Assembly (NCBI RefSeq): GCF_964204645.1
Contig: NC_134030.1
Location: forward strand, 12,359,947-12,423,946
DNA from: Tubulanus polymorphus
Lineage: Eukaryota; Animalia; Nemertea
Direction of reading: 5' to 3'
Length of the DNA stretch: 64,000 bases
Shown here: in pieces, positions 6,521 to 63,299 of the stretch
Position numbering within the stretch: position 1 is the first letter of the stretch
How the letters are laid out: each line of letters opens with the position of its first letter
Translations under genes and position numbers: made by a program
The notes under the pieces: model-generated
Told to the model about the DNA's origin: nothing
What the model saw: the letters and a program-made list of their open reading frames with translations, nothing else
Databases searched by the model: none

Positions 6521-7457
6521 TTTACACAAGGCCTGACGGATAGCCGCCACTGCGGCGCAGGACACTCATTACTAAGACATTAGTGGAACACTTTTTATTA
6601 AGTGTCGGCCAGTAAGACCGATTAGAGGCATCCGTCGCAAAAACCATGGTTATTCTATAACTGGGTACCGAACCCATATAGAATAGAAATCGTATGAATA
6701 TTAAGCGCCGAAATCGATGGCAATAAAATGTTCAATAAAGTTTTCATAAGAATTTGAGTGGGTACGAGAGACACACTGGGTATCACGGACTGGGTACTTA
6801 TAGCGGACACATGACGTCTCCGTATACCGTTGAATAAACTCGCTTCCCCGCCGCGATTTTTTATATATCGCAAGTGAGTTTCCGCCATTTTGTTTGTAAT
6901 GCGCATGCTCGACATTCAGTTTGTAAACACAATCCACACGTGTGCGCTACACTCGCTGTATCATAGACTGGTTGCCTGTTTCCATCAATATGAAGACATA
7001 GACTGGTCGCCTGTCCAACCCTGCGCCACCTGCATTCGCAGCCAGAATAGTCTAAAGACGCTTTTACGAAACTGAATCTTTGTAAATCGATTTAAGTTTC
7101 ACGTTTACGGCACACGGTTTAGTGAATCCGATTTGGTAAATCAACGCATTTATGGAAACGGCTTAGTAATTTGATTTACTAAATCGACTGACTTGCTCGG
7201 CGAGCAAGTTAGTGTGATATTCTCACCATCCGTTTTGCGGGCATGATGCAGATATATAGATATGGGGTACAAGCCGGGGCTGCCATTCTTATCACACCTA
7301 TAGCCTTAACTCTCATAATCCCCAAACAACCCACAATCCCAACTCTCATATACCCCAAAACCCCAATTCTCATTAAATCCCCAACCCCAACTCTCAAAAC
7401 AAATCCAACCTACCTCCAAATGTAGAAACCCTACGAATCCTGCAGTCGGCCGAACAG

Positions 7458-7463
7458 TTTTTT

Positions 7464-7495
<32 letters not shown>

Positions 7496-8153
7496 CTTCA
7501 TATAAAATGAATATAATGAGCGCAGATAGTACATATGAATATTGAAAATACAATTACAGTGACAAGATGGTAGCATACATAGATACATACAAAATACAGA
7601 CATTTACCTACGTACACGTACCCGTCCAGATATACATGTTACACATTAATATTGATTAGAAGTTTCACAAAACACCGGTTGGTCAAATCATAGAATTTGA
7701 TTTGAGTTCTATGGTCTAATATAGACTGATAACCCGTATACACATTTCGTCACACTGAAAATGTTTGCAAAGCTTATAAGCTTGGTCTGTTTAAGAAGTA
7801 GCCAAGAAGGTAACGTTGTCTAATTTGGTTATAAAAGTCACACTGGAAAATAAAATGATACTCGTCACCCAGTTTGTTTCTATTACATTAGGTGCAAATT
7901 CGATCTTCCCGGTTATTCTGTCATAGCGACCAATTTCGATTGGGAGCTTAAGGTTAGAGCATCTAAATTTATGGATGGGAATGAAATTTCGTGTAGATAA
8001 AAAAGAAAAATACTCGGACCCAATCTAGTTTAATATTCCTATATATCGACCATTTGAATGAATTGTTATCGGTTTGCCATTTTTGAATAAATTGAACTTG
8101 CAGTCTTGCTTAACTATTTGACCAAGGTATTTGACACTTGGGAAATTTTGATA
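7458..8153 (-). mobile_element. 3' portion of a degenerate LINE (CR1/RTE-X-like): ORF2 C-terminus, 3' UTR and tail
   Basis: Minus strand reads YQNFPSVKYLGQIVKQ/RLQVQFIQKWQTD...KFRCSNLKLPIEIGRYDR../EDRICT*CNRNKLGDEYHFIFQC (LINE C-terminal Cys/His motif), then AATAAA and an (AAACT)n-An tail at 7458-7494. Confidence 0.85.
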
Positions 8154-8383
8154 GTATAATATCCACACTGATCAGTGGTTTCTCGTTCCGCGGTTATGTA
8201 GTGATTGGGGATAAAAAACGAAACCCGGAACAAGTAGCCACATACGCTGGTTTTTTTTTTTTTTAATATCTTAACCCATCCTGTATTTCATTGGCCCATT
8301 CCCTCCACTGTACAAGGCACACCTGTCACACTCGACTCCCCATCTTCCGCAAACTAAGAAGTGACCGCGTCACTAGTGTCACA

Positions 8384-8419
8384 TGATCAGTGTGGATAGT
8401 ATAATATCCACACTGATCA
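8384..8419. other. Putative YR recombination site (B1/A2 junction), copy A
   Basis: TGATCAGTGTGGATA-GTATAA-TATCCACACTGATCA: 15-bp perfect inverted arms around a 6-bp spacer. Confidence 0.8.
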
Positions 8420-8687
8420 GTGGTTTCTCGTTCCGCGGTTATGTAGTGATTGGGGATAAAAAACGACCCAACCCCTTACTGATAACCACAACAAATACTA
8501 AACCTTTCCACAACTACACCCAAACCCCAACTATACTAGGCCGAGTGAAACGAGGCCAAAAATCAGAAGACAGAATATGCATCCGAAGTCGATTTATTTA
8601 GACCCGCCTTAGAAATCGGGTATATCAATATACAAAATTCGTATAAGCGTCTAGTTTCTTATCGATATAAATTGGCGTACGTAGAAC

Positions 8688-10025
8688 CTACATGGATGAA
8701 AACATTGGTTTAAACCCGCTTGTAGCATTATTCAGGCGATATGATTCTACACTTTTATCAGTTAACTGTCCCATAGCTTGACCGAGAGAGTCAGAGACTT
8801 TACCCTGCATCACACAAGCATGTTTGGTGTAATGCTTTGCCATGGACTGATGCTTCCAACCAATATAAGAAGTCACCTCTTTAGATGTATGGCCCAAAGA
8901 AGCCAACATAACGGAGCATCCAACCCTAAAACTATGCGGGGTCTCACCGTCATACATACAAATTTCTTTTAGGTAAGTTTTCAAACGGCTTCCCACCGCA
9001 TTCGAGTCGAGTCCGTTATTAACGATAGCGCCCTCTTTATTCGTTATCCGGAATAAGTAACCCCCTCCAAGGTCAACTCCAAGCGCCTTTACAACAGCAA
9101 AATACCTTTCAATCGCCAAAACCGGGCACAGAACCGGGTTGTTAAAACGAGTAACTACGGATGTCAAAACCGAACCATCCCGCAGTGTTTTCCCGAACGT
9201 TAGATTTAAAATGATTACCCTTCCATCGTCACTCTGAGAGATCCCATCTGTCAAAAACCGACCTAAGTCTGCCGCCCTATGTCCTGTTAGAAAATCAAGT
9301 TTGAAGAAAGCCTGGTCCCTTGCTAAAATATACTCCGTTACCGCGGGTAAATCTGGGACAGCCAAGCGTTTATCAATAGAGAGAATCATTGCCGTCAATT
9401 TGCTAAGGTACATTGGGACGGCTTGTTTAGGGGTGATCATAGCCACCGATTGCTCCTTCTTAGTCACTCTCAGGTATTGTTTTACCTCTTCTGATATGGT
9501 AGGATTCCCAGTTCCGCGCTCGGGATGCCAATAGCCAATTTTACCAATCGAGTTAAATATTGCCCTTATCTGACCCAGATAGGAATCGACCGTTCCGGCT
9601 GCCAGTCTTTTGGGGCATAAACAACCACCGGTCCTTGGTGAGGCCTTCGAGACTGCTTTCCAACCTCGTACCGGACAGGTTAAAGAGTGTACTACTGTTT
9701 TACCCCGAGCATCCCTGAATACCATGAACCTACAGATATCCCTAGGTGATGCCGTCAACAAGGATCTCGATGGGCGCAGTGACCCGAGGAACAAGACCAA
9801 ATCTTCTTCCAGTTTTGACTTCTTTCGGCCATAAACAGAGTTGCGCTCACTCTCTGACATAGATTTTAACCGGGCATCCAAATCTTTTAATGGTAAGGCT
9901 AGCAATGTACCGTTCTCGCCATCCGCCTTGCTTAACTCTGAACCACAATTGTAGCAGAAATTTGAGTGCTGTCGCGAGCGATGTCCACAGTCCGCACAAT
10001 GGTTCTCGTGATGCAGAGACAGATC
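8688..10025 (-). CDS. Tyrosine recombinase with N-terminal zinc ribbon and ALOG domain (terminal exon), copy A
   Basis: Open frame with TGHRAADL (R), GKT (K), PHSFRVG (HxxR), IGWK, AKHY (Y) and ALOG signature GKTVVH...C...CLCPKRLAAGTVDSYLGQIRAIF. Acceptor TTTTACAG|GAT. Confidence 0.9.
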   Translation of the reverse strand, partial: DLSLHHENHCADCGHRSRQHSNFCYNCGSELSKADGENGTLLALPLKDLDARLKSMSESERNSVYGRKKSKLEEDLVLFLGSLRPSRSLLTASPRDICRFMVFRDARGKTVVHSLTCPVRGWKAVSKASPRTGGCLCPKRLAAGTVDSYLGQIRAIFNSIGKIGYWHPERGTGNPTISEEVKQYLRVTKKEQSVAMITPKQAVPMYLSKLTAMILSIDKRLAVPDLPAVTEYILARDQAFFKLDFLTGHRAADLGRFLTDGISQSDDGRVIILNLTFGKTLRDGSVLTSVVTRFNNPVLCPVLAIERYFAVVKALGVDLGGGYLFRITNKEGAIVNNGLDSNAVGSRLKTYLKEICMYDGETPHSFRVGCSVMLASLGHTSKEVTSYIGWKHQSMAKHYTKHACVMQGKVSDSLGQAMGQLTDKSVESYRLNNATSGFKPMFSSM

Positions 10026-10212
10026 CTGTAAAATATGACAGATCTTAAAAGAACCATAACAAACGAGGTATATCAGAAAAGACAAAGCGTTTATTAACGT
10101 AAAAGCAGAGTTATGCATCCGGATTTTACCGTGCATAGATCAGAGTAGAAAATAAAGACCACCGTTACGCAACACCATGTTATCGCTCAGGAAAACATGT
10201 CAATTTAATCTT

Positions 10213-12386
10213 TCAATCTAATCTATCAAAATCTATCCTATAAACAAACAGATCCCACGGGATGCCTACTGTAACCTCCACAAAACCTTTTTTAGTCGGA
10301 TATTTCAAAACACCCACATCTCCCTTTTTGCCAAGCAGGCGACGTTTGGATGCATGAGAGGTTACCAAAGGCCACCAGAATGGCCTCGGAAAGATTTCTG
10401 GAATGACGATAGATGTTTCTTTGACCGCGTCTGCCAAGAATCGTAAAACCGCCGGTATCTTAGAAATTGGCGGAAACACATATGGATTAACCTCGTCGCA
10501 TAGATTTTGTGCGAACAGATCTACACCACAAGAATCAGTAGATGGCGTTGGCGTAAAATGTCGTAGTGGAGAGCCTGACAAATCTACCATTACGTTCGAA
10601 TCAAGGGCCATCAAATCAACCGAGTGTCCGTTTTCACCCCCATATTCACGTTGCACGAGCTGCCACATACGCGGAGATAACATACATTCCGATTTTCGCA
10701 AAATTCGCGAGGGAGCGTCTGCTAGATTCTCTTTTGACGGTACATAATGCAATTTCAACAACACATTTTGTTCTGCTGTTAGTTCAAACAAAAGCTTAAT
10801 TGCTTCTGACAGATCATGTGATTTGGAACCTTCACCAACCCATGCCGCAATCATAGTTTTATTATCTACAAAAGCGTCTACTCTACTGTCTCCAATTTTA
10901 TCAGAAACCACCATTAAAACGTTTTTAAGTGCCAGGGTTTATTACAATGGGTTTTTGTACCAGCTCCTGTGGCCAATAATCGGAGGGCTCAAACCTCTGC
11001 TCACCAATCGTGACTATCCCACCCCATCTAAAGAGGATGCGTCCGTGTACATCTGAATTCTGACATGCCACTCTTGGCGCCACCTTACCACCCTTGGCAA
11101 ACATTCAATTATCTTTCAGTACTCTATCTCAGTTCTGAGGTTGCCCCCAACCCTAATGAGTCTCGAGTTTCTGAATGCCTTAGAAATAGCTAAGTTTGAC
11201 TCCCTTGTATAAAGCTTCGCAGCTGGTACAACCAACGAGAAGGATATGATCTTACCCACAAACCGCTGAATGGTTTTAATGTTAACGAATTCGGACGATA
11301 AAATATTGTCCCTTAAAATGGCAAATTTTACCACCTTATCATTTGGGATCTCAAAACGTTCCTCTATAGTGTTAACAAATAAGCCTAAATGCTTTAATAA
11401 CTGACACGGTTCCAGGACGCATTTAAGGAGGCCTAGAAAATACCCTAGTCTTGTTAAAACTTGGGCCGTCATATATAGAGCTAGCCTAGCCTTTGTGATG
11501 GATTCTAAACCCCTAGCCGAGGAACTTAAAAGCTCCCCATTTAAACGGTCATCAATGTATTGAGTTATCTGTACTCCTAGGTCTCGAAGGTAACCCGTTG
11601 CAACCAAGCCAGTTTTCTGGTATATATAGGCCGAGGCCTTAAAACCAAAAGGAATAACGGTGTAAACGTAATACCAACGTTTCCAGTTGATTCCCAAATA
11701 CACCTCACTTCCCGGTGTTACCCTGATGTGGTCGTAACCACTTTTATCATCGACAGAGGTCATAAACGCGCTTTTATGTAGCATGCGAGGTACGTTTACC
11801 AAAGTTTCCAAATGGAAAGGCGAGTCCCGAATCCATAGATTTAGAAATCGTTCGTCGTGGCACATTCTGGGTTTCGTGGGTTCAACCGTCAAGGGCATAA
11901 CTAAATGCGGGGTGGATCGACCCCAACCTTTCCCCAGACCTTGAGTGATCCATTAGCCACCCGACCTTTTAATGTTGTAGAAATAAAATCTTCAAATTGT
12001 TCGCAGTTTCCAGCATTCGGGAACACCGTTTTTGGGGGCGCATCACAATCATACGTCTTGCCTTTAAACTGACCCTTAAACCTCTTAAAGAAATCTGGGA
12101 TATGAACACCATCTCGCACCCAAGATAATATCGTGTCTGACAACGGATCCTCTGACTGCCGTAGAATAAATTCCCATTCCTCCAGATGGCGACTCAGTTC
12201 ACCTGCGACGAAATTCTCCGGGTCCCTGAGGGGCAGGTCAAAAATTGTCAAATTGTTATACTTGTCCGCCGATTTCGAAACGGTCTCGGCTGAGACGACC
12301 TCAGGCAACGGTAACTGGACGGATGAACCTCTAGCACCAACCCAAAACACGGGTTTACACACAGGTATCTTCAACGGAACAAAATC
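10213..12386 (-). pseudogene. pol: Disrupted pol (RT-RNase H-methyltransferase-like), copy A
   Basis: Split over ORFs 11901-12410, 11116-11898 and 10213-10914. Motifs DDKSGYDHI, PFG, YIDD, YTDASS, VPSKENLADAPSR, VDLFAQ..PYVFPP..WWP. Same lesions as copy B. Confidence 0.88.
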
Positions 12387-12627
12387 CTGAAAAGACACAC
12401 TAAGGTCCATCAGTCCAGCCCCGTTGCCAGCACGACATAAGCCGTGACAACAGACTTAGATAGCCTGTGACAACAAAGCCAACCGATCACAAACAACCGA
12501 TAACAAAATGAATTATCCAACATATGATCAATTTAATGGAGAGAAAATAACCTTGTTTAACATCTTTAACAACACAATATAACATTACGTATCATCCAAA
12601 ACTAAATCCAATCAGGTTCTAACTCAT

Positions 12628-13170
12628 TTAGACAACCTCACTTTCAGTCTTCGTTACCACTTGTGGTTGCTTATTCTCAGGACAGTCGCGAACAAAATGA
12701 CCCTCTTTGCGGCATAAGAAACAATTCCCCCTAGAACTTCTCCCTGCTCTCCTTGTACCGTAACCTCGGCGCCCAACATATCCCCTGCCTACACCCGACC
12801 CACCCCAATAGCCGTAAGTTGGGTAATAATTGTTTGTGTGCGGCTTTTTAGCCCATTTTGCCTCCACTGATGCCACTTTTTCATCATCCGGGGAGCCAAT
12901 CAAACGCCTACACAAAGCAGGTAAGTCTGGAGAATCGATATTTCTCTTGATACTTTTCAGCACAGAATCAAAATACCCTTTTTTCGGATCTGTGGTTTCA
13001 GCTGCCACCTCTACCAAGCCTTCCATACAACCGAGAAGGAAGTATGGATCAAAGAAAGAGCCCGGCCTTTGAAGCGCTGCCCTCACCTGCATCAGAGCGC
13101 TCTCTACTGAACGAGCTGGATGTGTAACCTTCTTCTCGAGTTCCTCCAGACGCTCTAACAATTTTTTGTC
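12628..13170 (-). CDS. gag: gag-like nucleocapsid exon, copy A
   Basis: Zinc knuckle CFLCRKEGHFVRDC preceded by an RG-rich tract. Acceptor TTTCAG|GAC. Confidence 0.82.
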   Translation of the reverse strand, partial: DKKLLERLEELEKKVTHPARSVESALMQVRAALQRPGSFFDPYFLLGCMEGLVEVAAETTDPKKGYFDSVLKSIKRNIDSPDLPALCRRLIGSPDDEKVASVEAKWAKKPHTNNYYPTYGYWGGSGVGRGYVGRRGYGTRRAGRSSRGNCFLCRKEGHFVRDCPENKQPQVVTKTESEVV

Positions 13171-13651
13171 CTGAAACACACGAGATAAATACAAATATAG
13201 ACTAATCAGCATGACTTCGCAGTAAATAGTTTAAAAGATCGCCATGATTTCGGTTAACGAACATACAATCTATAGTCAAATCTATCATCCTAAATGTTTC
13301 ATGCTTCTGCTTCATACCATTACCTACATCTTAATGGGTTATCTTTACATTCCATCTTGCATCTTACATTTTCAGAAGCTGTCTTTTAAAAAACCTAATC
13401 TCTATGAACTTTCTCCTCCAGTAAAGGAAACGAAAAATCCTCTAACATAACCAAAACAGATCCCCATTCTGTACCCACTAAATCCTGGTATGTGCAAAGG
13501 CCCAGAGCAATAAACCTTAAACGCACAGAGCTACACATGTTTTTAAACAAATGTCTATTAATTTCCCAATAAATCTACCCAGTCCAGGCCTACCGACCAA
13601 GCCCGGGGGCTACAAATACAGATATAAAACTGAGAAAATAAAAACACTCAC

Positions 13652-14044
13652 CGGTTCAGAAACCCCATCTGGGGTTACCGCATCACTCTCCGCACCGACC
13701 GTGCTTGTACTAGGTGCGGGCACAGACTTCCTTTTTTTTGGTACCTGAGGGAGCTTGTTCGCGTTCTCGTTAGCGAAAATTATCAAGTGGTGCGCTAGCA
13801 GCGGACCTTCCGTCTCCTCCCAGTCCACCAGCGTTAACAGATCACTCATCTTTTTACCAGTCAGTGAAAATACCGCATCATCCACATACTTCCTCGGTGC
13901 CGCTTCTAGTGGCTTAAGCCTTTCGAACCTAGCTAAGGCTGTAGGCCGATCTAGGTTCAGATCTAACCCTCTTAATCTCAATAACATGGGGATGATGTCC
14001 ACCGTTTTCAAACCGTCTGACGATTTTAAAACCACCGGTTCCAT
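13652..14044 (-). CDS. Shared 131-aa N-terminal coding exon of the YR retrotransposon, copy A
   Basis: TTTCAG|AG-ATG acceptor and start, CCG|GTGAGT phase-0 donor, PKKRK motif. Confidence 0.72.
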
Positions 14045-14734
14045 CTCTGAAACAGATATGCGAAAAGAACATCAAAATTACTACCGCATCGTACCAGGAA
14101 TAAAATTTAAAAGTATTAGCAAACTGATCCTAACAACCGTCGACAAAGTTTAACCAAATATATACATGTGACCAGACCAGAAAAACGTTAAATTTTCGGC
14201 CACATGCCGAAATTATTTCTCTAGCCACCATCTTAAATTAAACAAGAACTAATACGACAGTAATACACTAATAAAAACTCACCTTAAATCCTCTGTACGA
14301 TACACAGTCAAACAAGTCTAATAATACCACCGAGCTCCAAAACTGTCCTCAAATCTGAAAAGCGATTTGACTAACAGGACTTGATGCTAACCCAACACTA
14401 CCGCTAACTACAAAACGAGACCAAGGACTAGGTAAAACGTCACCAGATTGCCTTTACACGCCCAGTAAGATTAAACCGAATTTTGAAAAGCCAATGAAAT
14501 CCCACAAAAGAATTCCAAATCCAGACCTTGGAAATGCGCCTATGAATGAAATAAATCTAGCAAAATGCACGCACTGTGACTTACAGTATTTACCCACGTC
14601 CCAATAAAGGCAAAAGCAATCACGCATGTAGCACTGTAACCTAAATGTCATTGACGGTCAAAATGTACCAAAGTACCCTAGTACTTCTAACCTGACCGAG
14701 AATTTTGCCTCAATAAAATCACTATCAATCCATC

Positions 14735-15075
14735 TCCCGTGCTTCATCCAAAATACTGCACTTATCCCAGAAAATCTAAAAGACCATCTGCCCGTGCTTA
14801 AACCCAAAATCACGGTACCGTATAACCCAAAACATCAAAATCAGTGTTTCATCCGAAATGACTGCACCAAAATTAACAAACCTAGTGCTTCATCCTAAAT
14901 TACTGCACTAAAACTAACAAAACCAGTGTTTCATCCGAAATGACTGCACCAAAAATAAATAAAAACCAGTGTTTCATCCGAAATGACTACACTAAAATCA
15001 ATAAACTCCAGTGTTTCATCCAAAATGACTGCACTAAAACTAATAAACCCAGTGTTTCATCCAAGATGACTACAC
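14735..15075. repeat. ~38-bp tandem array in the element 5' region, copy A
   Basis: Repeated CCAGTGTTTCATCCGAAATGACTGCAC..AAA units. Confidence 0.85.
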
Positions 15076-15949
15076 CAAAGTCTCCAAACCAGGCAAAAGG
15101 GGACGAAAACTAAAGAGGAAACCACAAACAAAATTCCAAAGAAAAATACCAAATGCTACCGGAAAGGAACCACAGAAAATCGGCAAACGCAGGAGACAAA
15201 ACTCACCACAAAACAGCTGACCACACACGTCCGATAGCTTCGAAAGCAAACTAAGAAGTGACCGCGTCACTAGTGTCACATGATCAGTGTGGATAGTATA
15301 CACTACTATAGTGATACTGTAACGCTGCTTGCTGGTGCGTTTGACATTTCATCAGCAGAAGATGAGCGCTGTATCTTCTGTTTGATAGAATTTGTAATAA
15401 ATTGTAATTTCTTGTGACCTGAAAATACTAAGCAGCAAATTTAATCGTCGCGATCGGGCGAAAAAATACGCTCAACCTTTAGCCGAACTATCGAAAAGAA
15501 GTTACCGTTCTGCGTACGAATTCGGTCGCTACGTTCCTATTTACGTTGGAACTCACACTCGTCCGTTGAATGAGCAGAACAGGGCAATCGATGTTCATTC
15601 AATAACCATGCCGGCCATGCCGGCCATGCAAACAAAAGACAGCCTACCGTCTACGGATGGAAGACGCGCCACGCCTTCGATGTCGTCGACGATTAATTAA
15701 AAGTTGAATTTCAATCGACGAGATAAATCCAATTGGGTTCTCCACCATGCTGTATTGATCTCCTCTCTCTTTTGCTTCGGATTCCGTGGATCGAGTGGAT
15801 TAAAAAACCCTAAGAGGACAAACGATTAACTTCGATTTAACATATCTTTATTTTTCCATCTCAAATACGCTTCTCTATGGCATCAACGCTCCCTCTACAA
15901 AATCACGTGACACTTACGTCACACAATCAATATTACTATATAACATTTT

Positions 15950-18606
15950 CTACGCTGAAAGGTTTGAGGCTGAGGACTTCTTTAACGAATCCAATGTAGA
16001 TATTTCTAATTTGAAAGCAGATATTCGTCTCAACAAAGAAAATGCGTTAATTATTGGGGTTATCGCCTGACTGATTTCTGCAAAACTCACGGGTTACTTA
16101 TTGCAAATGGCAGAATTTGGTAAGGATAGAGGTGTGGGTGCTTATACATGTCTTAAACGGAATAGCCAGCGCGTCATAGATTGTCTCGTCCCACATCCTA
16201 AAGTGTGCCGAGTTCGAATTCAAAGAGTTTAACCATATGTTTTCGGATGTGCACTACCCAATTAAGTGTATTCTAAATACATTGGACCGTATCGAGTGTA
16301 ATGTTCCCCCTCGTTTTAACAATAAAAGGAATAAAGAGAAGTTAAAGTGGAATCCCGTGAACCAGGCAATTTGAGAATCTTTTCCTCAAAAATTTTAGAT
16401 GATATGATATCAGATATATCACTGAATAAAATTTACTGTAACGTTGCGAATGAACGGTTATGTGAACACTTGGTCGAAGCAACTGAAGCGTCAATGGGTA
16501 GGTTTAAAATCAACAACAAGGGTCAAGAAGTACACAAAGCAAGGACTCGGTATTCTATAATGCAAATGTAAAACTGAATCAGAGAAACTTTAGAAGAGCG
16601 AAACGACGCTATCGATTTAGCAAAACTAATACTAATCGTATAAATGTTAATGATGCCTCTAAAGAGTATTAAGGATCTCTGAAACGCAGGAAGCTAGAAC
16701 AGGCAAAATTACATAACAAGACTCTGAGATCAATGGAAAATAGGTACCCAAAATATTATTTCTAAATATTTCAAAATACCGAGTTGTTCTGCCTGTAAAG
16801 CTTCTCTGGAAGATCTCTTCCACCATTTTAGTCACCTAAATGACAATATAGATGAGAGTTGTTCAGTAGAACAAAATATATCTAATGTAGAAACTTCGTT
16901 GATAACCTATTTGTCGATGACTTGAATAAGGATATAAACGGAAGCGAAAACCCCCTGAACCAGAACCAAGCGGGCTTCCGGAAGAAGCGTAGTATCAGAA
17001 CTGTATAGTATCAACGAGCATATTTCTTATTAAAACAATTGTGGACCTTTTCTTGAAAGACAATAGAAAGTTGTACTGTGAATTTATTGATTATATTAAG
17101 GCATTCGACACTGTATGGAGGAGAACAATGTATAGCAATATAAGAGCTGTAGTTGAAGTTAAGGAGGTTAATTCAGAATCTTTCCAAAATAATCTTGGTT
17201 TAAGACAAGGAGAAAATTTATCGCCGGTGCTCTTCTACATATGCGTCGATGACCTCGACGAATACATGTATTAAAATAGTTGCTCATCTATCAATTTCCC
17301 TGTAAGGCCACACCAAAAGAAAACCCTGTTTCTCGGGCCCGACCGACCCGATATTTCCCCATTTCAAATAATCATTTTCAGAATAAAATATCCGCCTACT
17401 GACCCTTTTTCAAAATTTTAGGTGAATAAACTTTTTTCAAAAATATATATGTGGCCGACCGACTACCAAACTCCTTTCTCGTAAATATTTTTTTACCAAA
17501 TCATGATGTCGGCACTGAGATCAACATCAATAACATTTTATTATATCGGATTTAAAATTTGATTCTGGAAATGGCGCAGCCATGCTCAGACAACTTTGCT
17601 AATCGGACTTTGATGGCGACTTTGGAGTGTAAAATTCCTGGAATTCCGTGAAATATGTTCAAAATATAGTTTTTTTTATAGTTAATTGTACAAACACCTC
17701 AATTTCCTTTTATTATTGTGGTCTACTAGCTGTTAATCATATTCCTGACTAAAAATTTAGTTCAGTAAAAATTATTTACGGCAACCTACCCACTGATAGA
17801 AGAATAAACGATATTTTTTTTCTATAAAAAGAAAAAAAAATGTCCTACCTACCTACCCATTTTGGTGATTGCCCTGCCCGAGAAATAGGATTTTCTTTTG
17901 GTGTGGCCTAAATGATATGTGGCTCCGGCTCTTAGCATTATTGTATGCAGACGATACTATCTTGATAGCTGAAAGTGTAGCTAATCTGCAGCAGATGCGT
18001 GATGTAACGGCTAGTTATTGTAAATTGTGGAAACTAATTATCATTACCGATAAAACGAAAGAAGCTCAAAGCGTTACCCAACTTTTTACATAGACGGAAA
18101 TGAAATAAAAAACTAAAGATTTTCGATACCTAGGGATAATATTTAACTACACTGGGTCGTTTAGTAAGCGTAAGGAAAGTATTTGTGAACATGCCAAGGA
18201 AAGACTATTTATGAACTTAAAAAGGTGAAAGAACAGTTACTGGAACTGGATGTAGCTCCTAGGTCATTTGACTCTATGTTTGCACCAATTCTAACATTTT
18301 GGGCTTAGGTTTGGGTTTTCGAGGATGTACAATGTATTGAAATAGTCCATCTCCTTTTTTGCAAGTGTATACTCAAACTCAAGCTGTCAACTCCAAATGG
18401 TATGATAAGGTCGTTTCCCTCTTGAAATAATAATCAAGATCAGGTTAATAAATTCTGGGGCAATCTAGTCTCAAGACAAGAGACGGTTTTTTTGTTAAAC
18501 TGTATCAAGTTTTATCAAATAACATTAAATAAAATTTTATTAGGTAATGTGAATTCCAAATGGATGACTTTTGCCAAATCTATTGCGGCTTTGGTGAATT
18601 CTGGTT
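15950..18606 (+). mobile_element. 5'/central portion of a degenerate LINE (APE endonuclease end and RT), interrupted by a MITE and by the YR element
   Basis: Fragments ANGRI/GKDRGVGAYTCL...VIDC, FSDVH, NQAGFRKKRS, FIDYIKAFDTVWR, GLRQGENLSPVLF, LYADDT, FRYLGIIF, ending CGFGEFWF at the copy B junction. 5' boundary approximate. Confidence 0.85.
17306..17908. mobile_element. PIF/Harbinger-type MITE inserted in the LINE RT
   Basis: 32-bp TIRs GGCCACACCAAAAGAAAA(C/T)CCT(G/A)TTTCTCGGG with 2 mismatches. TAA duplicated at 17303-17305 and 17909-17911. Removing it restores INFPVNDMWLRLLALLYADD. Confidence 0.92.
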
Positions 18607-18829
18607 CTATCCACACTGATCATGTGACACTAGTGACGCGGTCACTTCTTAGTTTGCTTTCGAAGCTATCGGACGTGTGTGGTCAGCTGTTTTGTGGTGA
18701 GTTTTGTCTCCTGCGTTTGCCGATTTTCTGTGGTTCCTTTCCGGTAGCATTTGGTATTTTTCTTTGGAATTTTGTTTGTGGTTTCCTCTTTAGTTTTCGT
18801 CCCCTTTTGCCTGGTTTGGAGACTTTGGT

Positions 18830-19170
18830 GTAGTCATCTTGGATGAAACACTGGGTTTATTAGTTTTAGTGCAGTCATTTTGGATGAAACACTGGAGTTT
18901 ATTGATTTTAGTGTAGTCATTTCGGATGAAACACTGGTTTTTATTTATTTTTGGTGCAGTCATTTCGGATGAAACACTGGTTTTGTTAGTTTTAGTGCAG
19001 TAATTTAGGATGAAGCACTAGGTTTGTTAATTTTGGTGCAGTCATTTCGGATGAAACACTGATTTTGATGTTTTGGGTTATACGGTACCGTGATTTTGGG
19101 TTTAAGCACGGGCAGATGGTCTTTTAGATTTTCTGGGATAAGTGCAGTATTTTGGATGAAGCACGGGAGA
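18830..19170. repeat. ~38-bp tandem array in the element 5' region, copy B
   Basis: About 8 units of GTGCAGTCATTT(C/T)GGATGAAACACTGG + T-rich linker, degenerating towards the 3' end. Confidence 0.85.
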
Positions 19171-19548
19171 TGGATTGATAGTGATTTTATTGAGGCAAAA
19201 TTCTCGGTCAGGTTAGAAGTACTAGGGTACTTTGGTACATTTTGACCGTCAATGACATTTAGGTTACAGTGCTACATGCGTGATTGCTTTTGCCTTTATT
19301 GGGACGTGGGTAAATACTGTAAGTCACAGTGCGTGCATTTTGCTAGATTTATTTCATTCATAGGCGCATTTCCAAGGTCTGGATTTGGAATTCTTTTGTG
19401 GGATTTCATTGGCTTTTCAAAATTCGGTTTAATCTTACTGGGCGTGTAAAGGCAATCTGGTGACGTTTTACCTAGTCCTTGGTCTCGTTTTGTAGTTAGC
19501 GGTAGTGTTGGGTTAGCATCAAGTCCTGTTAGTCAAATCGCTTTTCAG

Positions 19549-19620
19549 ATTTGAGGACAGTTTTGGAGCTCGGTGGTATTATTAGACTTGTTTGACTGTG
19601 TATCGTACAGAGGATTTAAG
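19549..19620 (+). other. Predicted non-coding 5' exon of the element transcript
   Basis: Acceptor CTTTTCAG| at 19548 and donor AAG|GTGAGT at 19620/19621. A further GTG|GTGAGT donor lies upstream at 18696/18697. Confidence 0.5.
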
Positions 19621-19858
19621 GTGAGTTTTTATTAGTGTATTACTGTCGTATTAGTTCTTGTTTAATTTAAGATGGTGGCTAGAGAAATAATTTCGGCATG
19701 TGGCCGAAAATTTAACGTTTTTCTGGTCTGGTCACATGTATATATTTGGTTAAACTTTGTCGACGGTTGTTAGGATCAGTTTGCTAATACTTTTAAATTT
19801 TATTCCTGGTACGATGCGGTAGTAATTTTGATGTTCTTTTCGCATATCTGTTTCAGAG

Positions 19859-20251
19859 ATGGAACCGGTGGTTTTAAAATCGTCAGACGGTTTGAAAACG
19901 GTGGACATCATCCCCATGTTATTGAGATTAAGAGGGTTAGATCTGAACCTAGATCGGCCTACAGCCTTAGCTAGGTTCGAAAGGCTTAAGCCACTAGAAG
20001 CGGCACCGAGGAAGTATGTGGATGATGCGGTATTTTCACTGACTGGTAAAAAGATGAGTGATCTGTTAACGCTGGTGGACTGGGAGGAGACGGAAGGTCC
20101 GCTGCTAGCGCACCACTTGATAATTTTCGCTAACGAGAACGCGAACAAGCTCCCTCAGGTACCAAAAAAAAGGAAGTCTGTGCCCGCACCTAGTACAAGC
20201 ACGGTCGGTGCGGAGAGTGATGCGGTAACCCCAGATGGGGTTTCTGAACCG
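19859..20251 (+). CDS. Shared 131-aa N-terminal coding exon, copy B
   Basis: Acceptor TTTCAG| at 19856, ATG at 19859, donor CCG|GTGAGT at 20251/20252 (393 nt, phase 0). Confidence 0.72.
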
Positions 20252-20732
20252 GTGAGTGTTTTTATTTTCTCAGTTTTATATCTGTATTTGTAGCCCCCGG
20301 GCTTGGTCGGTAGGCCTGGACTGGGTAGATTTATTGGGAAATTAATAGACATTTGTTTAAAAACATGTGTAGCTCTGTGCGTTTAAGGTTTATTGCTCTG
20401 GGCCTTTGCACATACCAGGATTTAGTGGGTACAGAATGGGGATCTGTTTTGGTTATGTTAGAGGATTTTTCGTTTCCTTTACTGGAGGAGAAAGTTCATA
20501 GAGATTAGGTTTTTTAAAAGACAGCTTCTGAAAATGTAAGATGCAAGATGGAATGTAAAGATAACCCATTAAGATGTAGGTAATGGTATGAAGCAGAAGC
20601 ATGAAACATTTAGGATGATAGATTTGACTATAGATTGTATGTTCGTTAACCGAAATCATGGCGATCTTTTAAACTATTTACTGCGAAGTCATGCTGATTA
20701 GTCTATATTTGTATTTATCTCGTGTGTTTCAG

Positions 20733-21275
20733 GACAAAAAATTGTTAGAGCGTCTGGAGGAACTCGAGAAGAAGGTTACACATCCAGCTCGTTCAGTAGA
20801 GAGCGCTCTGATGCAGGTGAGGGCAGCGCTTCAAAGGCCGGGCTCTTTCTTTGATCCATACTTCCTTCTCGGTTGTATGGAAGGCTTGGTAGAGGTGGCA
20901 GCTGAAACCACAGATCCGAAAAAAGGGTATTTTGATTCTGTGCTGAAAAGTATCAAGAGAAATATCGATTCTCCAGACTTACCTGCTTTGTGTAGGCGTT
21001 TGATTGGCTCCCCGGATGATGAAAAAGTGGCATCAGTGGAGGCAAAATGGGCTAAAAAGCCGCACACAAACAATTATTACCCAACTTACGGCTATTGGGG
21101 TGGGTCGGGTGTAGGCAGGGGATATGTTGGGCGCCGAGGTTACGGTACAAGGAGAGCAGGGAGAAGTTCTAGGGGGAATTGTTTCTTATGCCGCAAAGAG
21201 GGTCATTTTGTTCGCGACTGTCCTGAGAATAAGCAACCACAAGTGGTAACGAAGACTGAAAGTGAGGTTGTCTAA
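20733..21275 (+). CDS. gag: gag-like exon (spliced product 311 aa), copy B
   Basis: TTTCAG|GAC phase-0 acceptor, RG-rich region, CCHC knuckle. Confidence 0.82.
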   Translation, partial: DKKLLERLEELEKKVTHPARSVESALMQVRAALQRPGSFFDPYFLLGCMEGLVEVAAETTDPKKGYFDSVLKSIKRNIDSPDLPALCRRLIGSPDDEKVASVEAKWAKKPHTNNYYPTYGYWGGSGVGRGYVGRRGYGTRRAGRSSRGNCFLCRKEGHFVRDCPENKQPQVVTKTESEVV

Positions 21276-21516
21276 ATGAGTTAGAACCTGATTGGATTTA
21301 GTTTTGGATGATACGTAATGTTATATTGTGTTGTTAAAGATGTTAAACAAGGTTATTTTCTCTCCATTAAATTGATCATATGTTGGATAATTCATTTTGT
21401 TATCGGTTGTTTGTGATCGGTTGGCTTTGTTGTCACAGGCTATCTAAGTCTGTTGTCACGGCTTATGTCGTGCTGGCAACGGGGCTGGACTGATGGACCT
21501 TAGTGTGTCTTTTCAG

Positions 21517-23690
21517 GATTTTGTTCCGTTGAAGATACCTGTGTGTAAACCCGTGTTTTGGGTTGGTGCTAGAGGTTCATCCGTCCAGTTACCGTTGCCT
21601 GAGGTCGTCTCAGCCGAGACCGTTTCGAAATCGGCGGACAAGTATAACAATTTGACAATTTTTGACCTGCCCCTCAGGGACCCGGAGAATTTCGTCGCAG
21701 GTGAACTGAGTCGCCATCTGGAGGAATGGGAATTTATTCTACGGCAGTCAGAGGATCCGTTGTCAGACACGATATTATCTTGGGTGCGAGATGGTGTTCA
21801 TATCCCAGATTTCTTTAAGAGGTTTAAGGGTCAGTTTAAAGGCAAGACGTATGATTGTGATGCGCCCCCAAAAACGGTGTTCCCGAATGCTGGAAACTGC
21901 GAACAATTTGAAGATTTTATTTCTACAACATTAAAAGGTCGGGTGGCTAATGGATCACTCAAGGTCTGGGGAAAGGTTGGGGTCGATCCACCCCGCATTT
22001 AGTTATGCCCTTGACGGTTGAACCCACGAAACCCAGAATGTGCCACGACGAACGATTTCTAAATCTATGGATTCGGGACTCGCCTTTCCATTTGGAAACT
22101 TTGGTAAACGTACCTCGCATGCTACATAAAAGCGCGTTTATGACCTCTGTCGATGATAAAAGTGGTTACGACCACATCAGGGTAACACCGGGAAGTGAGG
22201 TGTATTTGGGAATCAACTGGAAACGTTGGTATTACGTTTACACCGTTATTCCTTTTGGTTTTAAGGCCTCGGCCTATATATACCAGAAAACTGGCTTGGT
22301 TGCAACGGGTTACCTTCGAGACCTAGGAGTACAGATAACTCAATACATTGATGACCGTTTAAATGGGGAGCTTTTAAGTTCCTCGGCTAGGGGTTTAGAA
22401 TCCATCACAAAGGCTAGGCTAGCTCTATATATGACGGCCCAAGTTTTAACAAGACTAGGGTATTTTCTAGGCCTCCTTAAATGCGTCCTGGAACCGTGTC
22501 AGTTATTAAAGCATTTAGGCTTATTTGTTAACACTATAGAGGAACGTTTTGAGATCCCAAATGATAAGGTGGTAAAATTTGCCATTTTAAGGGACAATAT
22601 TTTATCGTCCGAATTCGTTAACATTAAAACCATTCAGCGGTTTGTGGGTAAGATCATATCCTTCTCGTTGGTTGTACCAGCTGCGAAGCTTTATACAAGG
22701 GAGTCAAACTTAGCTATTTCTAAGGCATTCAGAAACTCGAGACTCATTAGGGTTGGGGGCAACCTCAGAACTGAGATAGAGTACTGAAAGATAATTGAAT
22801 GTTTGCCAAGGGTGGTAAGGTGGCGCCAAGAGTGGCATGTCAGAATTCAGATGTACACGGACGCATCCTCTTTAGATGGGGTGGGATAGTCACGATTGGT
22901 GAGCAGAGGTTTGAGCCCTCCGATTATTGGCCACAGGAGCTGGTACAAAAACCCATTGTAATAAACCCTGGCACTTAAAAACGTTTTAATGGTGGTTTCT
23001 GATAAAATTGGAGACAGTAGAGTAGACGCTTTTGTAGATAATAAAACTATGATTGCGGCATGGGTTGGTGAAGGTTCCAAATCACATGATCTGTCAGAAG
23101 CAATTAAGCTTTTGTTTGAACTAACAGCAGAACAAAATGTGTTGTTGAAATTGCATTATGTACCGTCAAAAGAGAATCTAGCAGACGCTCCCTCGCGAAT
23201 TTTGCGAAAATCGGAATGTATGTTATCTCCGCGTATGTGGCAGCTCGTGCAACGTGAATATGGGGGTGAAAACGGACACTCGGTTGATTTGATGGCCCTT
23301 GATTCGAACGTAATGGTAGATTTGTCAGGCTCTCCACTACGACATTTTACGCCAACGCCATCTACTGATTCTTGTGGTGTAGATCTGTTCGCACAAAATC
23401 TATGCGACGAGGTTAATCCATATGTGTTTCCGCCAATTTCTAAGATACCGGCGGTTTTACGATTCTTGGCAGACGCGGTCAAAGAAACATCTATCGTCAT
23501 TCCAGAAATCTTTCCGAGGCCATTCTGGTGGCCTTTGGTAACCTCTCATGCATCCAAACGTCGCCTGCTTGGCAAAAAGGGAGATGTGGGTGTTTTGAAA
23601 TATCCGACTAAAAAAGGTTTTGTGGAGGTTACAGTAGGCATCCCGTGGGATCTGTTTGTTTATAGGATAGATTTTGATAGATTAGATTGA
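21517..23690 (+). pseudogene. pol: Disrupted pol (RT-RNase H-methyltransferase-like), copy B
   Basis: TTTTCAG|GAT phase-0 acceptor. Frameshifts near 21993, 22872 and 22964; in-frame TGA at 22785-22787. Confidence 0.88.
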
Positions 23691-23877
23691 AAGATTAAAT
23701 TGACATGTTTTCCTGAGCGATAACATGGTGTTGCGTAACGGTGGTCTTTATTTTCTACTCTGATCTATGCACGGTAAAATCCGGATGCATAACTCTGCTT
23801 TTACGTTAATAAACGCTTTGTCTTTTCTGATATACCTCGTTTGTTATGGTTCTTTTAAGATCTGTCATATTTTACAG

Positions 23878-25215
23878 GATCTGTCTCTGCATCACGAGAA
23901 CCATTGTGCGGACTGTGGACATCGCTCGCGACAGCACTCAAATTTCTGCTACAATTGTGGTTCAGAGTTAAGCAAGGCGGATGGCGAGAACGGTACATTG
24001 CTAGCCTTACCATTAAAAGATTTGGATGCCCGGTTAAAATCTATGTCAGAGAGTGAGCGCAACTCTGTTTATGGCCGAAAGAAGTCAAAACTGGAAGAAG
24101 ATTTGGTCTTGTTCCTCGGGTCACTGCGCCCATCAAGATCCTTGTTGACGGCATCACCTAGGGATATCTGTAGGTTCATGGTATTCAGGGATGCTCGGGG
24201 TAAAACAGTAGTACACTCTTTAACCTGTCCGGTACGAGGTTGGAAAGCAGTCTCGAAGGCCTCACCAAGGACCGGTGGTTGTTTATGCCCCAAAAGACTG
24301 GCAGCCGGAACGGTCGATTCCTATCTGGGTCAGATAAGGGCAATATTTAACTCGATTGGTAAAATTGGCTGTTGGCATCCCGAGCGCGGAACTGGGAATC
24401 CTACCATATCAGAAGAGGTAAAACAATACCTGAGAGTGACTAAGAAGGAGCAATCGGTGGCTATGATCACCCCTAAACAAGCCGTCCCAATGTACCTTAG
24501 CAAATTGACGGCAATGATTCTCTCTATTGATAAACGCTTGGCTGTCCCAGATTTACCCGCGGTAACGGAGTATATTTTAGCAAGGGACCAGGCTTTCTTC
24601 AAACTTGATTTTCTAACAGGACATAGGGCGGCAGACTTAGGTCGGTTTTTGACAGATGGGATCTCTCAGAGTGACGATGGAAGGGTAATCATTTTAAATC
24701 TAACGTTCGGGAAAACACTGCGGGATGGTTCGGTTTTGACATCCGTAGTTACTCGTTTTAACAACCCGGTTCTGTGCCCGGTTTTGGCGATTGAAAGGTA
24801 TTTTGCTGTTGTAAAGGCGCTTGGAGTTGACCTTGGAGGGGGTTACTTATTCCGGATAACGAATAAAGAGGGCGCTATCGTTAATAACGGACTCGACTCG
24901 AATGCGGTGGGAAGCCGTTTGAAAACTTACCTAAAAGAAATTTGTATGTATGACGGTGAGACCCCGCATAGTTTTAGGGTTGGATGCTCCGTTATGTTGG
25001 CTTCTTTGGGCCATACATCTAAAGAGGTGACTTCTTATATTGGTTGGAAGCATCAGTCCATGGCAAAGCATTACACCAAACATGCTTGTGTGATGCAGGG
25101 TAAAGTCTCTGACTCTCTCGGTCAAGCTATGGGACAGTTAACTGATAAAAGTGTAGAATCATATCGCCTGAATAATGCTACAAGCGGGTTTAAACCAATG
25201 TTTTCATCCATGTAG
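23878..25215 (+). CDS. ALOG-domain tyrosine recombinase exon (spliced product 576 aa), copy B
   Basis: TTTTACAG|GAT phase-0 acceptor; CxxC...CxxC ribbon, ALOG motif and complete R-K-HxxR-W-Y catalytic set. Confidence 0.9.
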   Translation, partial: DLSLHHENHCADCGHRSRQHSNFCYNCGSELSKADGENGTLLALPLKDLDARLKSMSESERNSVYGRKKSKLEEDLVLFLGSLRPSRSLLTASPRDICRFMVFRDARGKTVVHSLTCPVRGWKAVSKASPRTGGCLCPKRLAAGTVDSYLGQIRAIFNSIGKIGCWHPERGTGNPTISEEVKQYLRVTKKEQSVAMITPKQAVPMYLSKLTAMILSIDKRLAVPDLPAVTEYILARDQAFFKLDFLTGHRAADLGRFLTDGISQSDDGRVIILNLTFGKTLRDGSVLTSVVTRFNNPVLCPVLAIERYFAVVKALGVDLGGGYLFRITNKEGAIVNNGLDSNAVGSRLKTYLKEICMYDGETPHSFRVGCSVMLASLGHTSKEVTSYIGWKHQSMAKHYTKHACVMQGKVSDSLGQAMGQLTDKSVESYRLNNATSGFKPMFSSM

Positions 25216-25483
25216 GTTCTACGTACGCCAATTTATATCGATAAGAAACTAGACGCTTATACGAATTTTGTATATTAATATACCCGATTTCTAAGGCGGG
25301 TCTAAATAAATCGACTTCGGATGCATATTCTGTCTTCTGATTTTTGGCCTCGTTTCACTCGGCCTAGTATAGTTGGGGTTTGGGTGTAGTTGTGGAAAGG
25401 TTTAGTATTTGTTGTGGTTATCAGTAAGGGGTTGGGTCGTTTTTTATCCCCAATCACTACATAACCGCGGAACGAGAAACCAC

Positions 25484-25519
25484 TGATCAGTGTGGATATT
25501 ATACTATCCACACTGATCA
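25484..25519. other. Putative YR recombination site (B1/A2 junction), copy B
   Basis: TGATCAGTGTGGATA-TTATAC-TATCCACACTGATCA. Confidence 0.8.
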
Positions 25520-26340
25520 TGTGACACTAGTGACGTGGTCACTTCTTAGTTTGCGGAAGATGGGGAGTCGAGTGTGACAGGTGTGCCTTGTACAGTGGAG
25601 GGAATGGGCCAATGAAATACAGGATGGGTTAAGATATTAAAAAAAAAAAAACCAGCGTATGTGGCTACTTGTTCCGGGTTTCGTTTTTTATCCCCAATCA
25701 CTACATAACCGCGGAACGAGAAACCACTGATCAGTGTGGATATTATACTGTACGCGCGTGTGTTTGTGTGTGCAACAGTCTAATAATCTAATGATTTCCG
25801 CGCGCACGTGGAGGCCTTGTGTAAGTGGATGTTCGCTTACACTTCAATGTCAATCGATTCAATCACCCGGTATTAAAATGAAACAATACCTATGGCGGAT
25901 AATAATTATATTCATACCAGTAATGAGCATTTGAAATTCGCACGTATACGGCACCTAGTCTAATGAAACGTTCGCCATTCTATGGCTTTCCCATAATTAT
26001 TTTAGTAGCGCCGGAATTCCCCGTATATCACAAAAACAGCCAATCACATTAGCTCGTAGAGACAACGCCCCCAATCGAAGTCATTGCAATTTTATACGCG
26101 AGAGCTAAGAATTTTCCCGCCAAAAACAGTTTTTCGTAGAATTTTTACAATGTTGACCATGTCATCGACGGAGGTTCGCCATGTCTTCAATCGCATCGAT
26201 TATACGTCGTTTACGCCGAGAACCAATGAAACAAATGCCCACATATAAAAACGTACCGCGATTTTACATGAATTGGCTCAATGCCAACTTCATATTGCTG
26301 ACAAGGGTAACTCCAAAAATCGCACGTGGAAAATCGCTAC

Positions 26341-26470
26341 TATCCTTGATGACGTGAGTTGATCTTTCACGTCATGACATTATCCTTCACGTAATGAGTT
26401 TATCCTTCACATTATGAGTTGATCCTTCACGTTATGAGATTATCCATCACGTTATGGGTTTATCCTTCAC
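26341..26470. repeat. 20-bp minisatellite, about 6 units
   Basis: (T/G)ATCCTTCACGTTATGAGTT-like units. Confidence 0.8.
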
Positions 26471-63120: not shown

Positions 63121-63299
63121 AGACTAGTTAGTTAGAAGTAACGCAAACCGACAATGTATAAGGAAAGCGGATCACTCGCTACATAGCCATATAAGAACCC
63201 TTTACATATGGCTTGATCCTCTCACACTCATGTGTTACGCTTGACCCAAATTGAGAAAAATCCAGCATCGATCGTTGAACTCTGATTGCTTTAATATTT

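What the first reader, a model, noticed from the sequence alone, without database searches (positions are those of the whole stretch)
8100..25770. The two inverted copies have swapped flanks: the 3.3-kb segment between them is inverted
Seen: the LINE ending at 18606 (+; TGC GGC TTT GGT GAA TTC TGG TT) continues in frame at the outer flank of the other copy (8153 downward, minus strand), giving CGFGEFWFYQNFPSVKYLGQIVKQ/RLQVQFIQKW. That matches the intact motif in the independent LINE at ~63860 (LGYGNAWYNQ...IEQRIKDQFSQKW). Reciprocally, copy A's 5' flank joined to copy B's 3' flank rebuilds an imperfect palindrome. So B-5' pairs with A-3' and A-5' pairs with B-3'. Inference, three explanations: ectopic recombination between two nearby inverted insertions (a potentially flip-flopping inversion); intramolecular replicative transposition, which in bacterial systems leaves exactly this product and would be new for a YR retroelement; or misassembly across 7-kb near-identical repeats.
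Basis: partly seen in the sequence, partly recalled or inferred. Interest (0 to 1): 0.8.

Follow-up and report, generated by a model that had tools for sequence, protein, structure and literature searches.

The report
Retroelement pair flanking an inverted segment
Two almost identical 7.1-kb copies of a tyrosine-recombinase retrotransposon sit in opposite orientation around a 3.3-kb segment, and an old LINE split between them shows that segment has been flipped, a well-known result of recombination between inverted repeats, if the assembly is right.

Summary
The main observation holds. Copy A (8154-15296, coding strand minus) and copy B (18607-25748, coding strand plus) are 99.93% identical and inverted relative to each other.

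A decayed LINE runs on the plus strand up to 18606/7. It resumes on the minus strand at 8153 and continues to its (AAACT)n tail near 7458. Database LINE ORF2 proteins align to both pieces, never overlapping and with a mismatch of 0-4 residues in the eight best-fitting of the 26 that hit both, so B's 5' flank and A's 3' flank were once one insertion site.

The codon at the join needs one base (C at 18607) that the element and the target share.

The element is a split-direct-repeat YR retroelement (Ngaro or Pat1-like). Its YR gene is intact and its RNase H region carries in-frame stops. It has an internal palindromic recombination site, and the two copies carry these sites in inverted orientation.

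Most likely there were two nearby insertions, followed by an inversion through recombination between the copies. Homologous recombination is the likelier route; YR-catalysed exchange is possible. Misassembly and a one-step duplicative inversion are not excluded, and only long reads can decide. This is an ordinary kind of event, with moderate interest.

The parts
7458..8153 (-). 3' part of the old LINE: C-terminal ORF2 domain with its Cys/His motif, the 3' UTR and an (AAACT)5 poly-A tail. It abuts the 3' end of copy A.
   Evidence: tblastn of database LINE ORF2 proteins, e.g. P0176 residues 1046-1117 and P0096 residues 1027-1136. Tail sequence seen.
8154..15296 (-). Copy A of the YR retroelement (7143 nt). 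In coding order: A1 15246-15296; 41-nt tandem repeats 14842-15079; gag with zinc knuckle about 12631-13230; RT about 11119-11952; RNase H and tail 10216-10938; YR with ALOG domain 8688-10136; B1 8399-8466; A2 8349-8398; B2 8154-8221.
8384..8419 (.). Internal full recombination site of copy A (the B1|A2 junction, equal to the predicted circle junction). It has 15-nt perfect inverted arms around a 6-nt asymmetric spacer.
   Evidence: only two matches in the window, none expected by chance; inverted repeat I4.
10941..11118 (-). Stretch of pol between RT and RNase H with four in-frame stop codons. Their first bases on the coding strand are at 11118, 11016, 10944 and 10941. Copy B has the same stops at 22785, 22887, 22959 and 22962.
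   Evidence: Coral homologues P0030 and P0072 align straight through this stretch in one frame.
15297..18606 (+). The inverted segment. It holds about 190-500 nt of unassigned sequence, then the 5' part of the LINE (endonuclease and RT, decayed) from about 15825 to 18606. A 603-bp MITE-like insert lies at 17306-17908.
18607..25748 (+). Copy B of the YR retroelement (7142 nt). YR ORF at 23767-25215, RT at 21951-22784, gag at 20673-21272.
25484..25519 (.). Internal full recombination site of copy B, inverted relative to the site in copy A.
8251..9768 (.). The only stretch where the copies differ: 8251 (poly-T length), 8367, 8626, 9532 and 9768. The inner 5.5 kb next to the inverted segment is identical in both copies.
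25749..26000 (+). 3' flank of copy B. This is the partner of the 15297 side in the reconstructed second insertion site.
   Evidence: No LINE signal found here.

Best explanation
Shown: an old LINE, already decayed and carrying a MITE, received one copy of a split-direct-repeat YR retroelement at the point now split between 18606/7 and 8153.

Inferred: a second copy of the same element inserted about 3.3 kb away in the opposite orientation. Its site is now split between 15296/7 and 25748/9. Each insertion happened without a target duplication, by exchange between the element's circle junction and a target sharing a short core with it. After un-swapping the flanks, those cores are 5 nt (CTATC) and 6 nt (TATACT).

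Inferred: the two inverted copies then recombined with each other, most likely by ordinary homologous recombination. That flipped everything between the exchange points and left each copy with one flank from each original site. The complete identity of the inner 5.5 kb, against five differences in the outer 1.6 kb, suggests gene conversion accompanied or followed the exchange. A structure like this could flip again.
For: - The copies are inverted and 99.93% identical.
- LINE collinearity across the two flanks holds against 26 independent database proteins, and to within a codon against P0096.
- The middle LINE piece lacks its 3' end and the left piece is only the 3' end. This is unusual for LINEs unless one copy was interrupted.
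- Element anatomy is A1-[gag, RT, RH, YR]-B1A2-B2, and B1A2 equals the junction of its two ends. This matches the published model of integration from a circle without target duplication, through a short sequence shared with the target (PMC3266345, PMC7192593; Crypton microhomology of 4-6 bp in PMC13465315).
- As assembled, copy B would have only a 2-nt core (CT) and copy A a 9-nt one (TATACTATC). Un-swapped, the cores are 5 and 6 nt (read).
- All 5 differences lie in the outer 22.6% of the copies. By position alone that is p about 6e-4, and CpG density does not explain it.
- Exchanged flanks on inverted copies are the accepted mark of inversion by ectopic recombination (PMC2775673).
Against: - No reads, second haplotype or other individuals were available, so the orientation rests on the assembly alone.
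- The second flank pair has no independent feature spanning it.
- Two insertions of one family within 3.3 kb is a coincidence unless the element prefers to land near existing copies.
- A single crossover does not itself make the inner 5.5 kb identical, so a conversion tract of unusual length or repeated events must be assumed.
- Both copies share the same in-frame stops in pol, so both retrotranspositions would have needed enzymes supplied in trans.
Confidence: 0.55

Rival explanations
1. The inversion is real but was made by the element's own tyrosine recombinase. It would act on the two internal full sites (8384-8419 and 25484-25519), which lie in inverted orientation, as Flp does on FRT sites in the yeast 2-micron plasmid. 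About 17 kb between the sites would then be a reversible switch whenever the YR is expressed.
For: - Each copy holds exactly one complete site, with 15-nt perfect arms and a 6-nt asymmetric spacer. The two sites are inverted relative to each other, and no such site is expected by chance.
- The YR ORF is open in both copies (483 codons). The residues R287, K316, H401, R404, W427 and Y436 sit in columns invariant across 13 relatives.
Against: - Nothing in the sequence marks the exchange point.
- No expression or activity data exist.
- Site-specific exchange does not explain the identical inner 5.5 kb.
- Homologous recombination between 7-kb repeats of 99.9% identity needs no special enzyme.
Confidence: 0.15
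2. Assembly artefact: the true genome has the un-inverted order, with each copy sitting cleanly in its own site. The assembler chose the wrong orientation for the 3.3-kb segment because its two neighbours are identical over 5.5 kb.
For: - The inner 5.5 kb of the two copies is identical. Only reads longer than about 5.6 kb that link a variant site or an outer flank to the middle segment can fix the orientation.
- The un-inverted order would restore a single clean LINE interrupted by one element.
Against: - A contig that runs through two 7.1-kb repeats of 99.93% identity, with no gaps and with the few differences kept, implies long reads. Such reads would usually span one copy. This is inference only.
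- The clustering of differences points to real exchange between the copies.
Confidence: 0.15
3. One-step duplicative inversion: only one insertion (in the LINE) ever happened. A single DNA-level event then both copied the element in reverse orientation at a nearby site and inverted the interval. This is the topology of intramolecular replicative transposition in bacteria, or of a replication template switch.
For: - The product has the same topology as the two-insertion route.
- It removes the need for two independent insertions 3.3 kb apart.
- Both copies share the same pol defects.
- The YR gene is intact.
Against: - The element encodes a YR and no DDE transposase, and there are no target duplications.
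- My literature searches turned up no replicative strand-transfer mechanism for YR retroelements.
- Copies born identical should not show differences confined to one end.
- The second site carries its own 6-nt core shared with the circle junction, as expected for an ordinary integration.
Confidence: 0.1

Closest known systems
Inversions made by ectopic recombination between inverted transposon copies (Galileo in Drosophila buzzatii, PMC2775673; also reported for IS elements, Ty, L1 and Alu)
   Same: There are two homologous copies in opposite orientation at the two ends of the inverted segment. Each copy carries one flank from each original insertion site.
   Different: This element makes no target duplication, so the swap is read from a split LINE rather than from exchanged duplications. 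The inverted segment is only 3.3 kb. No third copy is available to show that the two copies are chimeric, and no un-inverted allele is known.
Ngaro and Pat1-like (split-direct-repeat) YR retrotransposons of the DIRS order (PMC8547959, PMC4157794, PMC3266345)
   Same: It has the A1-[ORFs]-B1A2B2 repeat layout, with the internal repeats downstream of the YR. It encodes gag with a zinc knuckle, RT, RNase H and a YR with an ALOG-type N-terminal domain. It inserts without target duplication.
   Different: It is only about 40-50% identical in protein to the nearest database relatives (amphioxus, corals, sea anemones, molluscs, an annelid). A 128-nt spacer lies between A2 and B2. RNase H is interrupted by stop codons. 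Whether it has the methyltransferase domain that separates Pat1-like from Ngaro is unresolved.
Flp/FRT inversion in the yeast 2-micron plasmid; Cre/lox between inverted sites
   Same: Two full sites, with inverted arms and an asymmetric spacer, lie in inverted orientation on one molecule alongside a cognate YR gene with the catalytic residues in place.
   Different: No evidence that the enzyme acts on integrated copies, and no evidence that both orientations exist.
Intramolecular replicative transposition (Tn3, Mu, some IS elements)
   Same: The end product is the same: two inverted copies flanking an inverted interval, each copy with one old and one new flank.
   Different: That route needs a DDE transposase and leaves target duplications. 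This element has a YR, replicates through RNA and shows no duplications.

Membership tests
TE-mediated inversion by ectopic recombination | Two homologous copies in opposite orientation at the two breakpoints | tested here: met
   7.1-kb arms, 99.93% identical, inverted.
TE-mediated inversion by ectopic recombination | Exchanged flanks or target duplications between the two copies | tested here: met
   LINE ORF2 is collinear across the B-5' flank and the A-3' flank. The other pair has no independent marker.
TE-mediated inversion by ectopic recombination | Both copies chimeric relative to other copies of the family | not testable with these tools
TE-mediated inversion by ectopic recombination | Un-inverted or empty alleles exist in the population | not testable with these tools
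   No reads, haplotypes or other assemblies of this genome could be reached.
Ngaro | Split direct repeats A1-[ORFs]-B1A2B2 with the internal repeats downstream of the YR | tested here: met
   (repeat families D4, D5). Definition taken from PMC8547959 and PMC4157794.
Ngaro | RT/RNase H plus a tyrosine recombinase, and no integrase | tested here: met
   Pfam RVT_1 and Phage_integrase with ALOG. RNase H is recognised by homologues only and is interrupted by stops.
Ngaro | No methyltransferase domain | tested here: inconclusive
   Pfam finds nothing in the RNase H-tail ORF even at E up to 10. A confident model (pLDDT 91) gives only weak Foldseek hits to N6-adenine methyltransferases, with TM about 0.4 and E about 3e-4.
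Pat1-like (echinoderm form) | Split direct repeats, gag zinc finger, YR in the same orientation, plus a methyltransferase domain | tested here: inconclusive
   Repeats, zinc knuckle and orientation are met. The methyltransferase domain is unresolved.
DIRS1-like | Long inverted terminal repeats with an internal complementary region | tested here: not met
   The termini are split direct repeats. Only 15-nt arms at the junction are inverted.
Replicative (Tn3/Mu-type) intramolecular transposition | DDE transposase and target duplications in inverted orientation | tested here: not met
   No DDE domain among the element's ORFs. No duplications at the four junctions.
Site-specific invertible segment (Flp/FRT type) | Two full recombination sites in inverted orientation plus a cognate YR with catalytic residues | tested here: met
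   Sites at 8384-8419 and 25484-25519. R, K, H, R, W and Y lie in invariant columns.
Site-specific invertible segment (Flp/FRT type) | Both orientations present, and switching depends on the recombinase | not testable with these tools
   Needs single-molecule reads or an activity assay.

The most novel reading that the evidence does not exclude
The pair of integrated copies forms a natural Flp/FRT-like switch in an animal genome. The element's own tyrosine recombinase would flip the roughly 17 kb between the two internal full sites, so inverted pairs of such retroelements would be reversible, enzyme-driven inversion modules rather than passive substrates for homologous recombination.
Probability: 0.15. 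Interest if true: 0.75.

Novelty: new member of a known kind. Interest (0 to 1): 0.4.

Why it matters
If the orientation is real, this is a clean, nucleotide-resolved small inversion made by a young YR retroelement pair. My literature searches found no such case described for this poorly studied element class.

It also gives two usable facts about the family:
- The predicted circle junction looks like a classic recombinase site, with 15-nt inverted arms around a 6-nt spacer.
- Both reconstructed targets share 5-6 nt with that junction, which fits the microhomology model proposed for DIRS and Crypton elements.

Inverted pairs carrying intact YR genes and full internal sites would be a good place to test whether these recombinases act on chromosomal copies. 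As a general phenomenon, inversion between inverted repeats is ordinary.

Tried and rejected
- **In-window LINE as reference.** Using the LINE at 63.7 kb gave E=1.9, too divergent. I replaced it with 37 full-length database LINE proteins.
- **LINE continuation or target duplication in the other flanks.** None was found in the right flank or at the 15297 side, so the second flank pair remains unsupported by an independent marker.
- **Core length as a test of pairing.** The total microhomology is 11 nt under either pairing. Only its distribution differs (9+2 against 5+6), so this argument is suggestive only.
- **Fold-back or hairpin artefact.** Rejected, because the inner flanks of the two copies are unrelated sequences.
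- **Two unrelated truncated LINEs.** Rejected, because the same proteins hit both pieces without overlap in protein coordinates, and in the eight best-fitting alignments the two pieces are contiguous to within 0-4 residues.
- **CpG decay as the cause of clustered differences.** Rejected, because 25% of CpGs lie in the 23% of the copy that holds all the differences.
- **Other copies or alleles.** A metagenome scan for the recombination site found nothing. The exact proteins are not in the protein collection, where the best hits are 40-50% identical.
- **Organism.** A GON-domain ORF search gave no taxon. The contig is not human: its nearest relatives are in amphioxus, corals, sea anemones, molluscs and an annelid.
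- **Joined LINE query.** I did not build or search a joined version of the two LINE halves. Each half was compared separately by reference.
Full report
**What is in the sequence**

The window holds a single long inverted repeat. After realignment and a one-base correction of the boundary, copy A is 8154-15296 and copy B is 18607-25748. They differ by four transitions (A coordinates 8367, 8626, 9532, 9768) and one poly-T length difference (8251). No other copy or fragment of the element lies in the window.

**What the element is**

The ORFs lie on the minus strand in A and the plus strand in B. Pfam finds a gag zinc knuckle, RVT_1, and a tyrosine recombinase with an ALOG-type N-terminal domain.

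The ends are split direct repeats:
- A 51-nt A1 at the 5' end recurs as A2 near the 3' end.
- A 68-nt B1 just upstream of A2 recurs as the terminal B2.

This is the A1-[ORFs]-B1A2B2 layout given for Ngaro elements (PMC8547959), with the internal repeats downstream of the YR (PMC4157794).

The internal B1|A2 junction equals the sequence formed by joining the element's two ends. It is a 36-nt site with perfect 15-nt inverted arms around the asymmetric 6-nt spacer TTATAC. It occurs exactly twice in the window, at 8384-8419 and 25484-25519, in inverted relative orientation, with none expected by chance.

The YR ORF is open in both copies, with one amino-acid difference. The canonical R, K, H, R, W and Y positions fall in columns invariant across 13 relatives.

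The pol frame is not intact. Coral homologues align through the RT-to-RNase H stretch in a single frame, and the window element has four stop codons there (B 22785, 22887, 22959, 22962). It also changes frame near element position 3345-3393. Both copies share all of these features.

Whether a methyltransferase domain is present is unresolved, and that is what would make the element Pat1-like rather than Ngaro. Pfam is blank. A confident model (pLDDT 91) gives only weak fold matches to N6-adenine methyltransferases.

The nearest protein relatives are 40-50% identical and come from amphioxus, corals, sea anemones, molluscs and an annelid. The contig is therefore from an invertebrate animal and is not human.

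**The test of swapped flanks**

The middle segment carries a decayed LINE on the plus strand, with endonuclease and RT motifs, ending at 18606. The left flank on the minus strand, from 8153 downward, carries a LINE C-terminal domain. That ends in an (AAACT)5 poly-A tail near 7458.

I therefore searched the protein representatives with a 93-residue RT piece of the middle LINE. That gave 37 full-length ORF2 proteins with endonuclease and RT domains.

Each was compared separately with these proteins.
- All 37 proteins hit the middle piece and 26 also hit the left-flank piece.
- In no case do the two pieces overlap in protein coordinates.
- The protein residues left between the two alignments match the codons left in the DNA, with a median excess of 7 and an excess of 0-4 in the eight best-fitting cases.
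- P0123 runs 843-975 on 18216-18611 and 975-1062 on 8168-7914.
- P0096 aligns GFGEVWF to 18587-18607 and 1027-1136 to 8103-7780. The spacing from that W to the next conserved W is 28 residues in P0096 and 27-28 in the window.

The LINE was therefore one continuous copy, cut at a single point now divided between B's 5' flank and A's 3' flank. A LINE piece lacking its 3' end beside a piece that is only the 3' end also fits a single interrupted copy.

- The quoted peptide needs the C at 18607 to complete the Phe codon. That base is both the element's first base and part of the target.
- The 'imperfect palindrome' of the other flank pair is 5 of 7 matching bases and is not informative.
- No LINE signal or target duplication links the 15297 side to the 25749 side. 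That pairing follows from topology alone.

**Junction cores**

I compared the four junctions with the circle junction.
- As assembled, the flanks of A share 9 nt with it and those of B share 2 nt.
- After un-swapping, the LINE site shares 5 nt (CTATC) and the second site shares 6 nt (TATACT).

Published models have YR elements integrate through a short sequence shared by the circle junction and the target, without target duplication. This is 3 bp for DIRS1-like elements (PMC3266345, PMC7192593) and 4-6 bp of microhomology for Cryptons (PMC13465315). Two cores of 5-6 nt fit that better than 9 and 2. The total is the same either way, so this is supporting evidence only.

**History**

All five differences lie in the outer 1615 nt of the copies, and the inner 5.5 kb next to the inverted segment is identical.
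- By position alone this is about p = 6e-4.
- CpG density does not explain it, although two of the four substitutions are at CpG sites.
- The inner parts therefore share a more recent common origin than the outer parts.

I read this as gene conversion between the arms. It would mean the arms do interact in vivo, which favours a real recombination event. A recombinant cDNA or a polishing artefact could give the same pattern.

**Mechanism and ranking**

Inverted copies with exchanged flanks are the accepted signature of inversion by ectopic recombination (PMC2775673).

| Explanation | Probability |
|---|---|
| Two insertions, then inversion by homologous recombination | about 0.55 |
| Two insertions, then inversion by the element's own YR at the two internal sites | about 0.15 |
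| Misassembly of the orientation | about 0.15 |
| One-step duplicative inversion | about 0.10 |

- The one-step route would remove the coincidence of two insertions 3.3 kb apart. It has no known chemistry for a YR retroelement, leaves no duplications, and does not explain the one-sided differences.
- Against misassembly, a gap-free contig through two 7.1-kb repeats that keeps their few differences implies long reads. That is an inference, not a test.

**Limits**

- A metagenome scan for the recombination site found nothing.
- No reads or other alleles could be reached.

**Verdict**

The central observation is real and well supported. It belongs to a known kind of event (repeat-mediated inversion) in an understudied element class. 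The enzyme-driven flip is a testable and more interesting possibility.

Noticed in passing
17303-17911: A 603-bp MITE-like insert (17306-17908) sits inside the LINE reverse transcriptase. It has 34-nt terminal inverted repeats at 94% complementarity, and TAA on both sides, a duplication that I recall as typical of PIF/Harbinger elements.
   Followed up: partly
10941-11118 (A) and 22785-22964 (B): Both copies share four in-frame stop codons in the RT-to-RNase H stretch, plus a frame change upstream of RT. Coral homologues read straight through this stretch. The element therefore looks dependent on enzymes supplied in trans, although its YR gene is intact.
   Followed up: yes
22965-23687 (B), 10216-10938 (A): The region after RNase H has no Pfam match but folds confidently (pLDDT 91). 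It gives weak structural matches to N6-adenine methyltransferases (PCIF1, KsgA/DIMT1). A nearly invariant N-P-Y-V-F-P-P stretch lies in it.
   Followed up: partly
8251-9768 vs 24135-25652: All differences between the copies lie in the outer 1.6 kb and the inner 5.5 kb is identical. One of the differences changes YR residue 202 (Tyr in A, Cys in B).
   Followed up: partly
14842-15079 and 18824-19061: About six tandem copies of a 41-nt unit lie in the element's 5' untranslated region.
   Followed up: no
5940-6425: A satellite-like array of a 35-nt unit (about 14 copies, with a higher-order period of 174 nt) lies in the left flank.
   Followed up: no
7330-7396; 26355-26472; 2315-2498: Three further tandem arrays: a 24-nt G-rich array just beyond the LINE tail, a 20-nt array in the right flank, and a (TA)92 microsatellite.
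   Followed up: no
63000-64000 (+): A second decayed LINE of a related family runs off the end of the window. 18 of the 37 database LINE proteins hit it.
   Followed up: partly
31484-32017 (-): An ORF with a GON domain (Pfam E=1.4e-15), probably an exon of a host ADAMTS/GON-like gene. The word search gave only distant hits and no taxon.
   Followed up: partly
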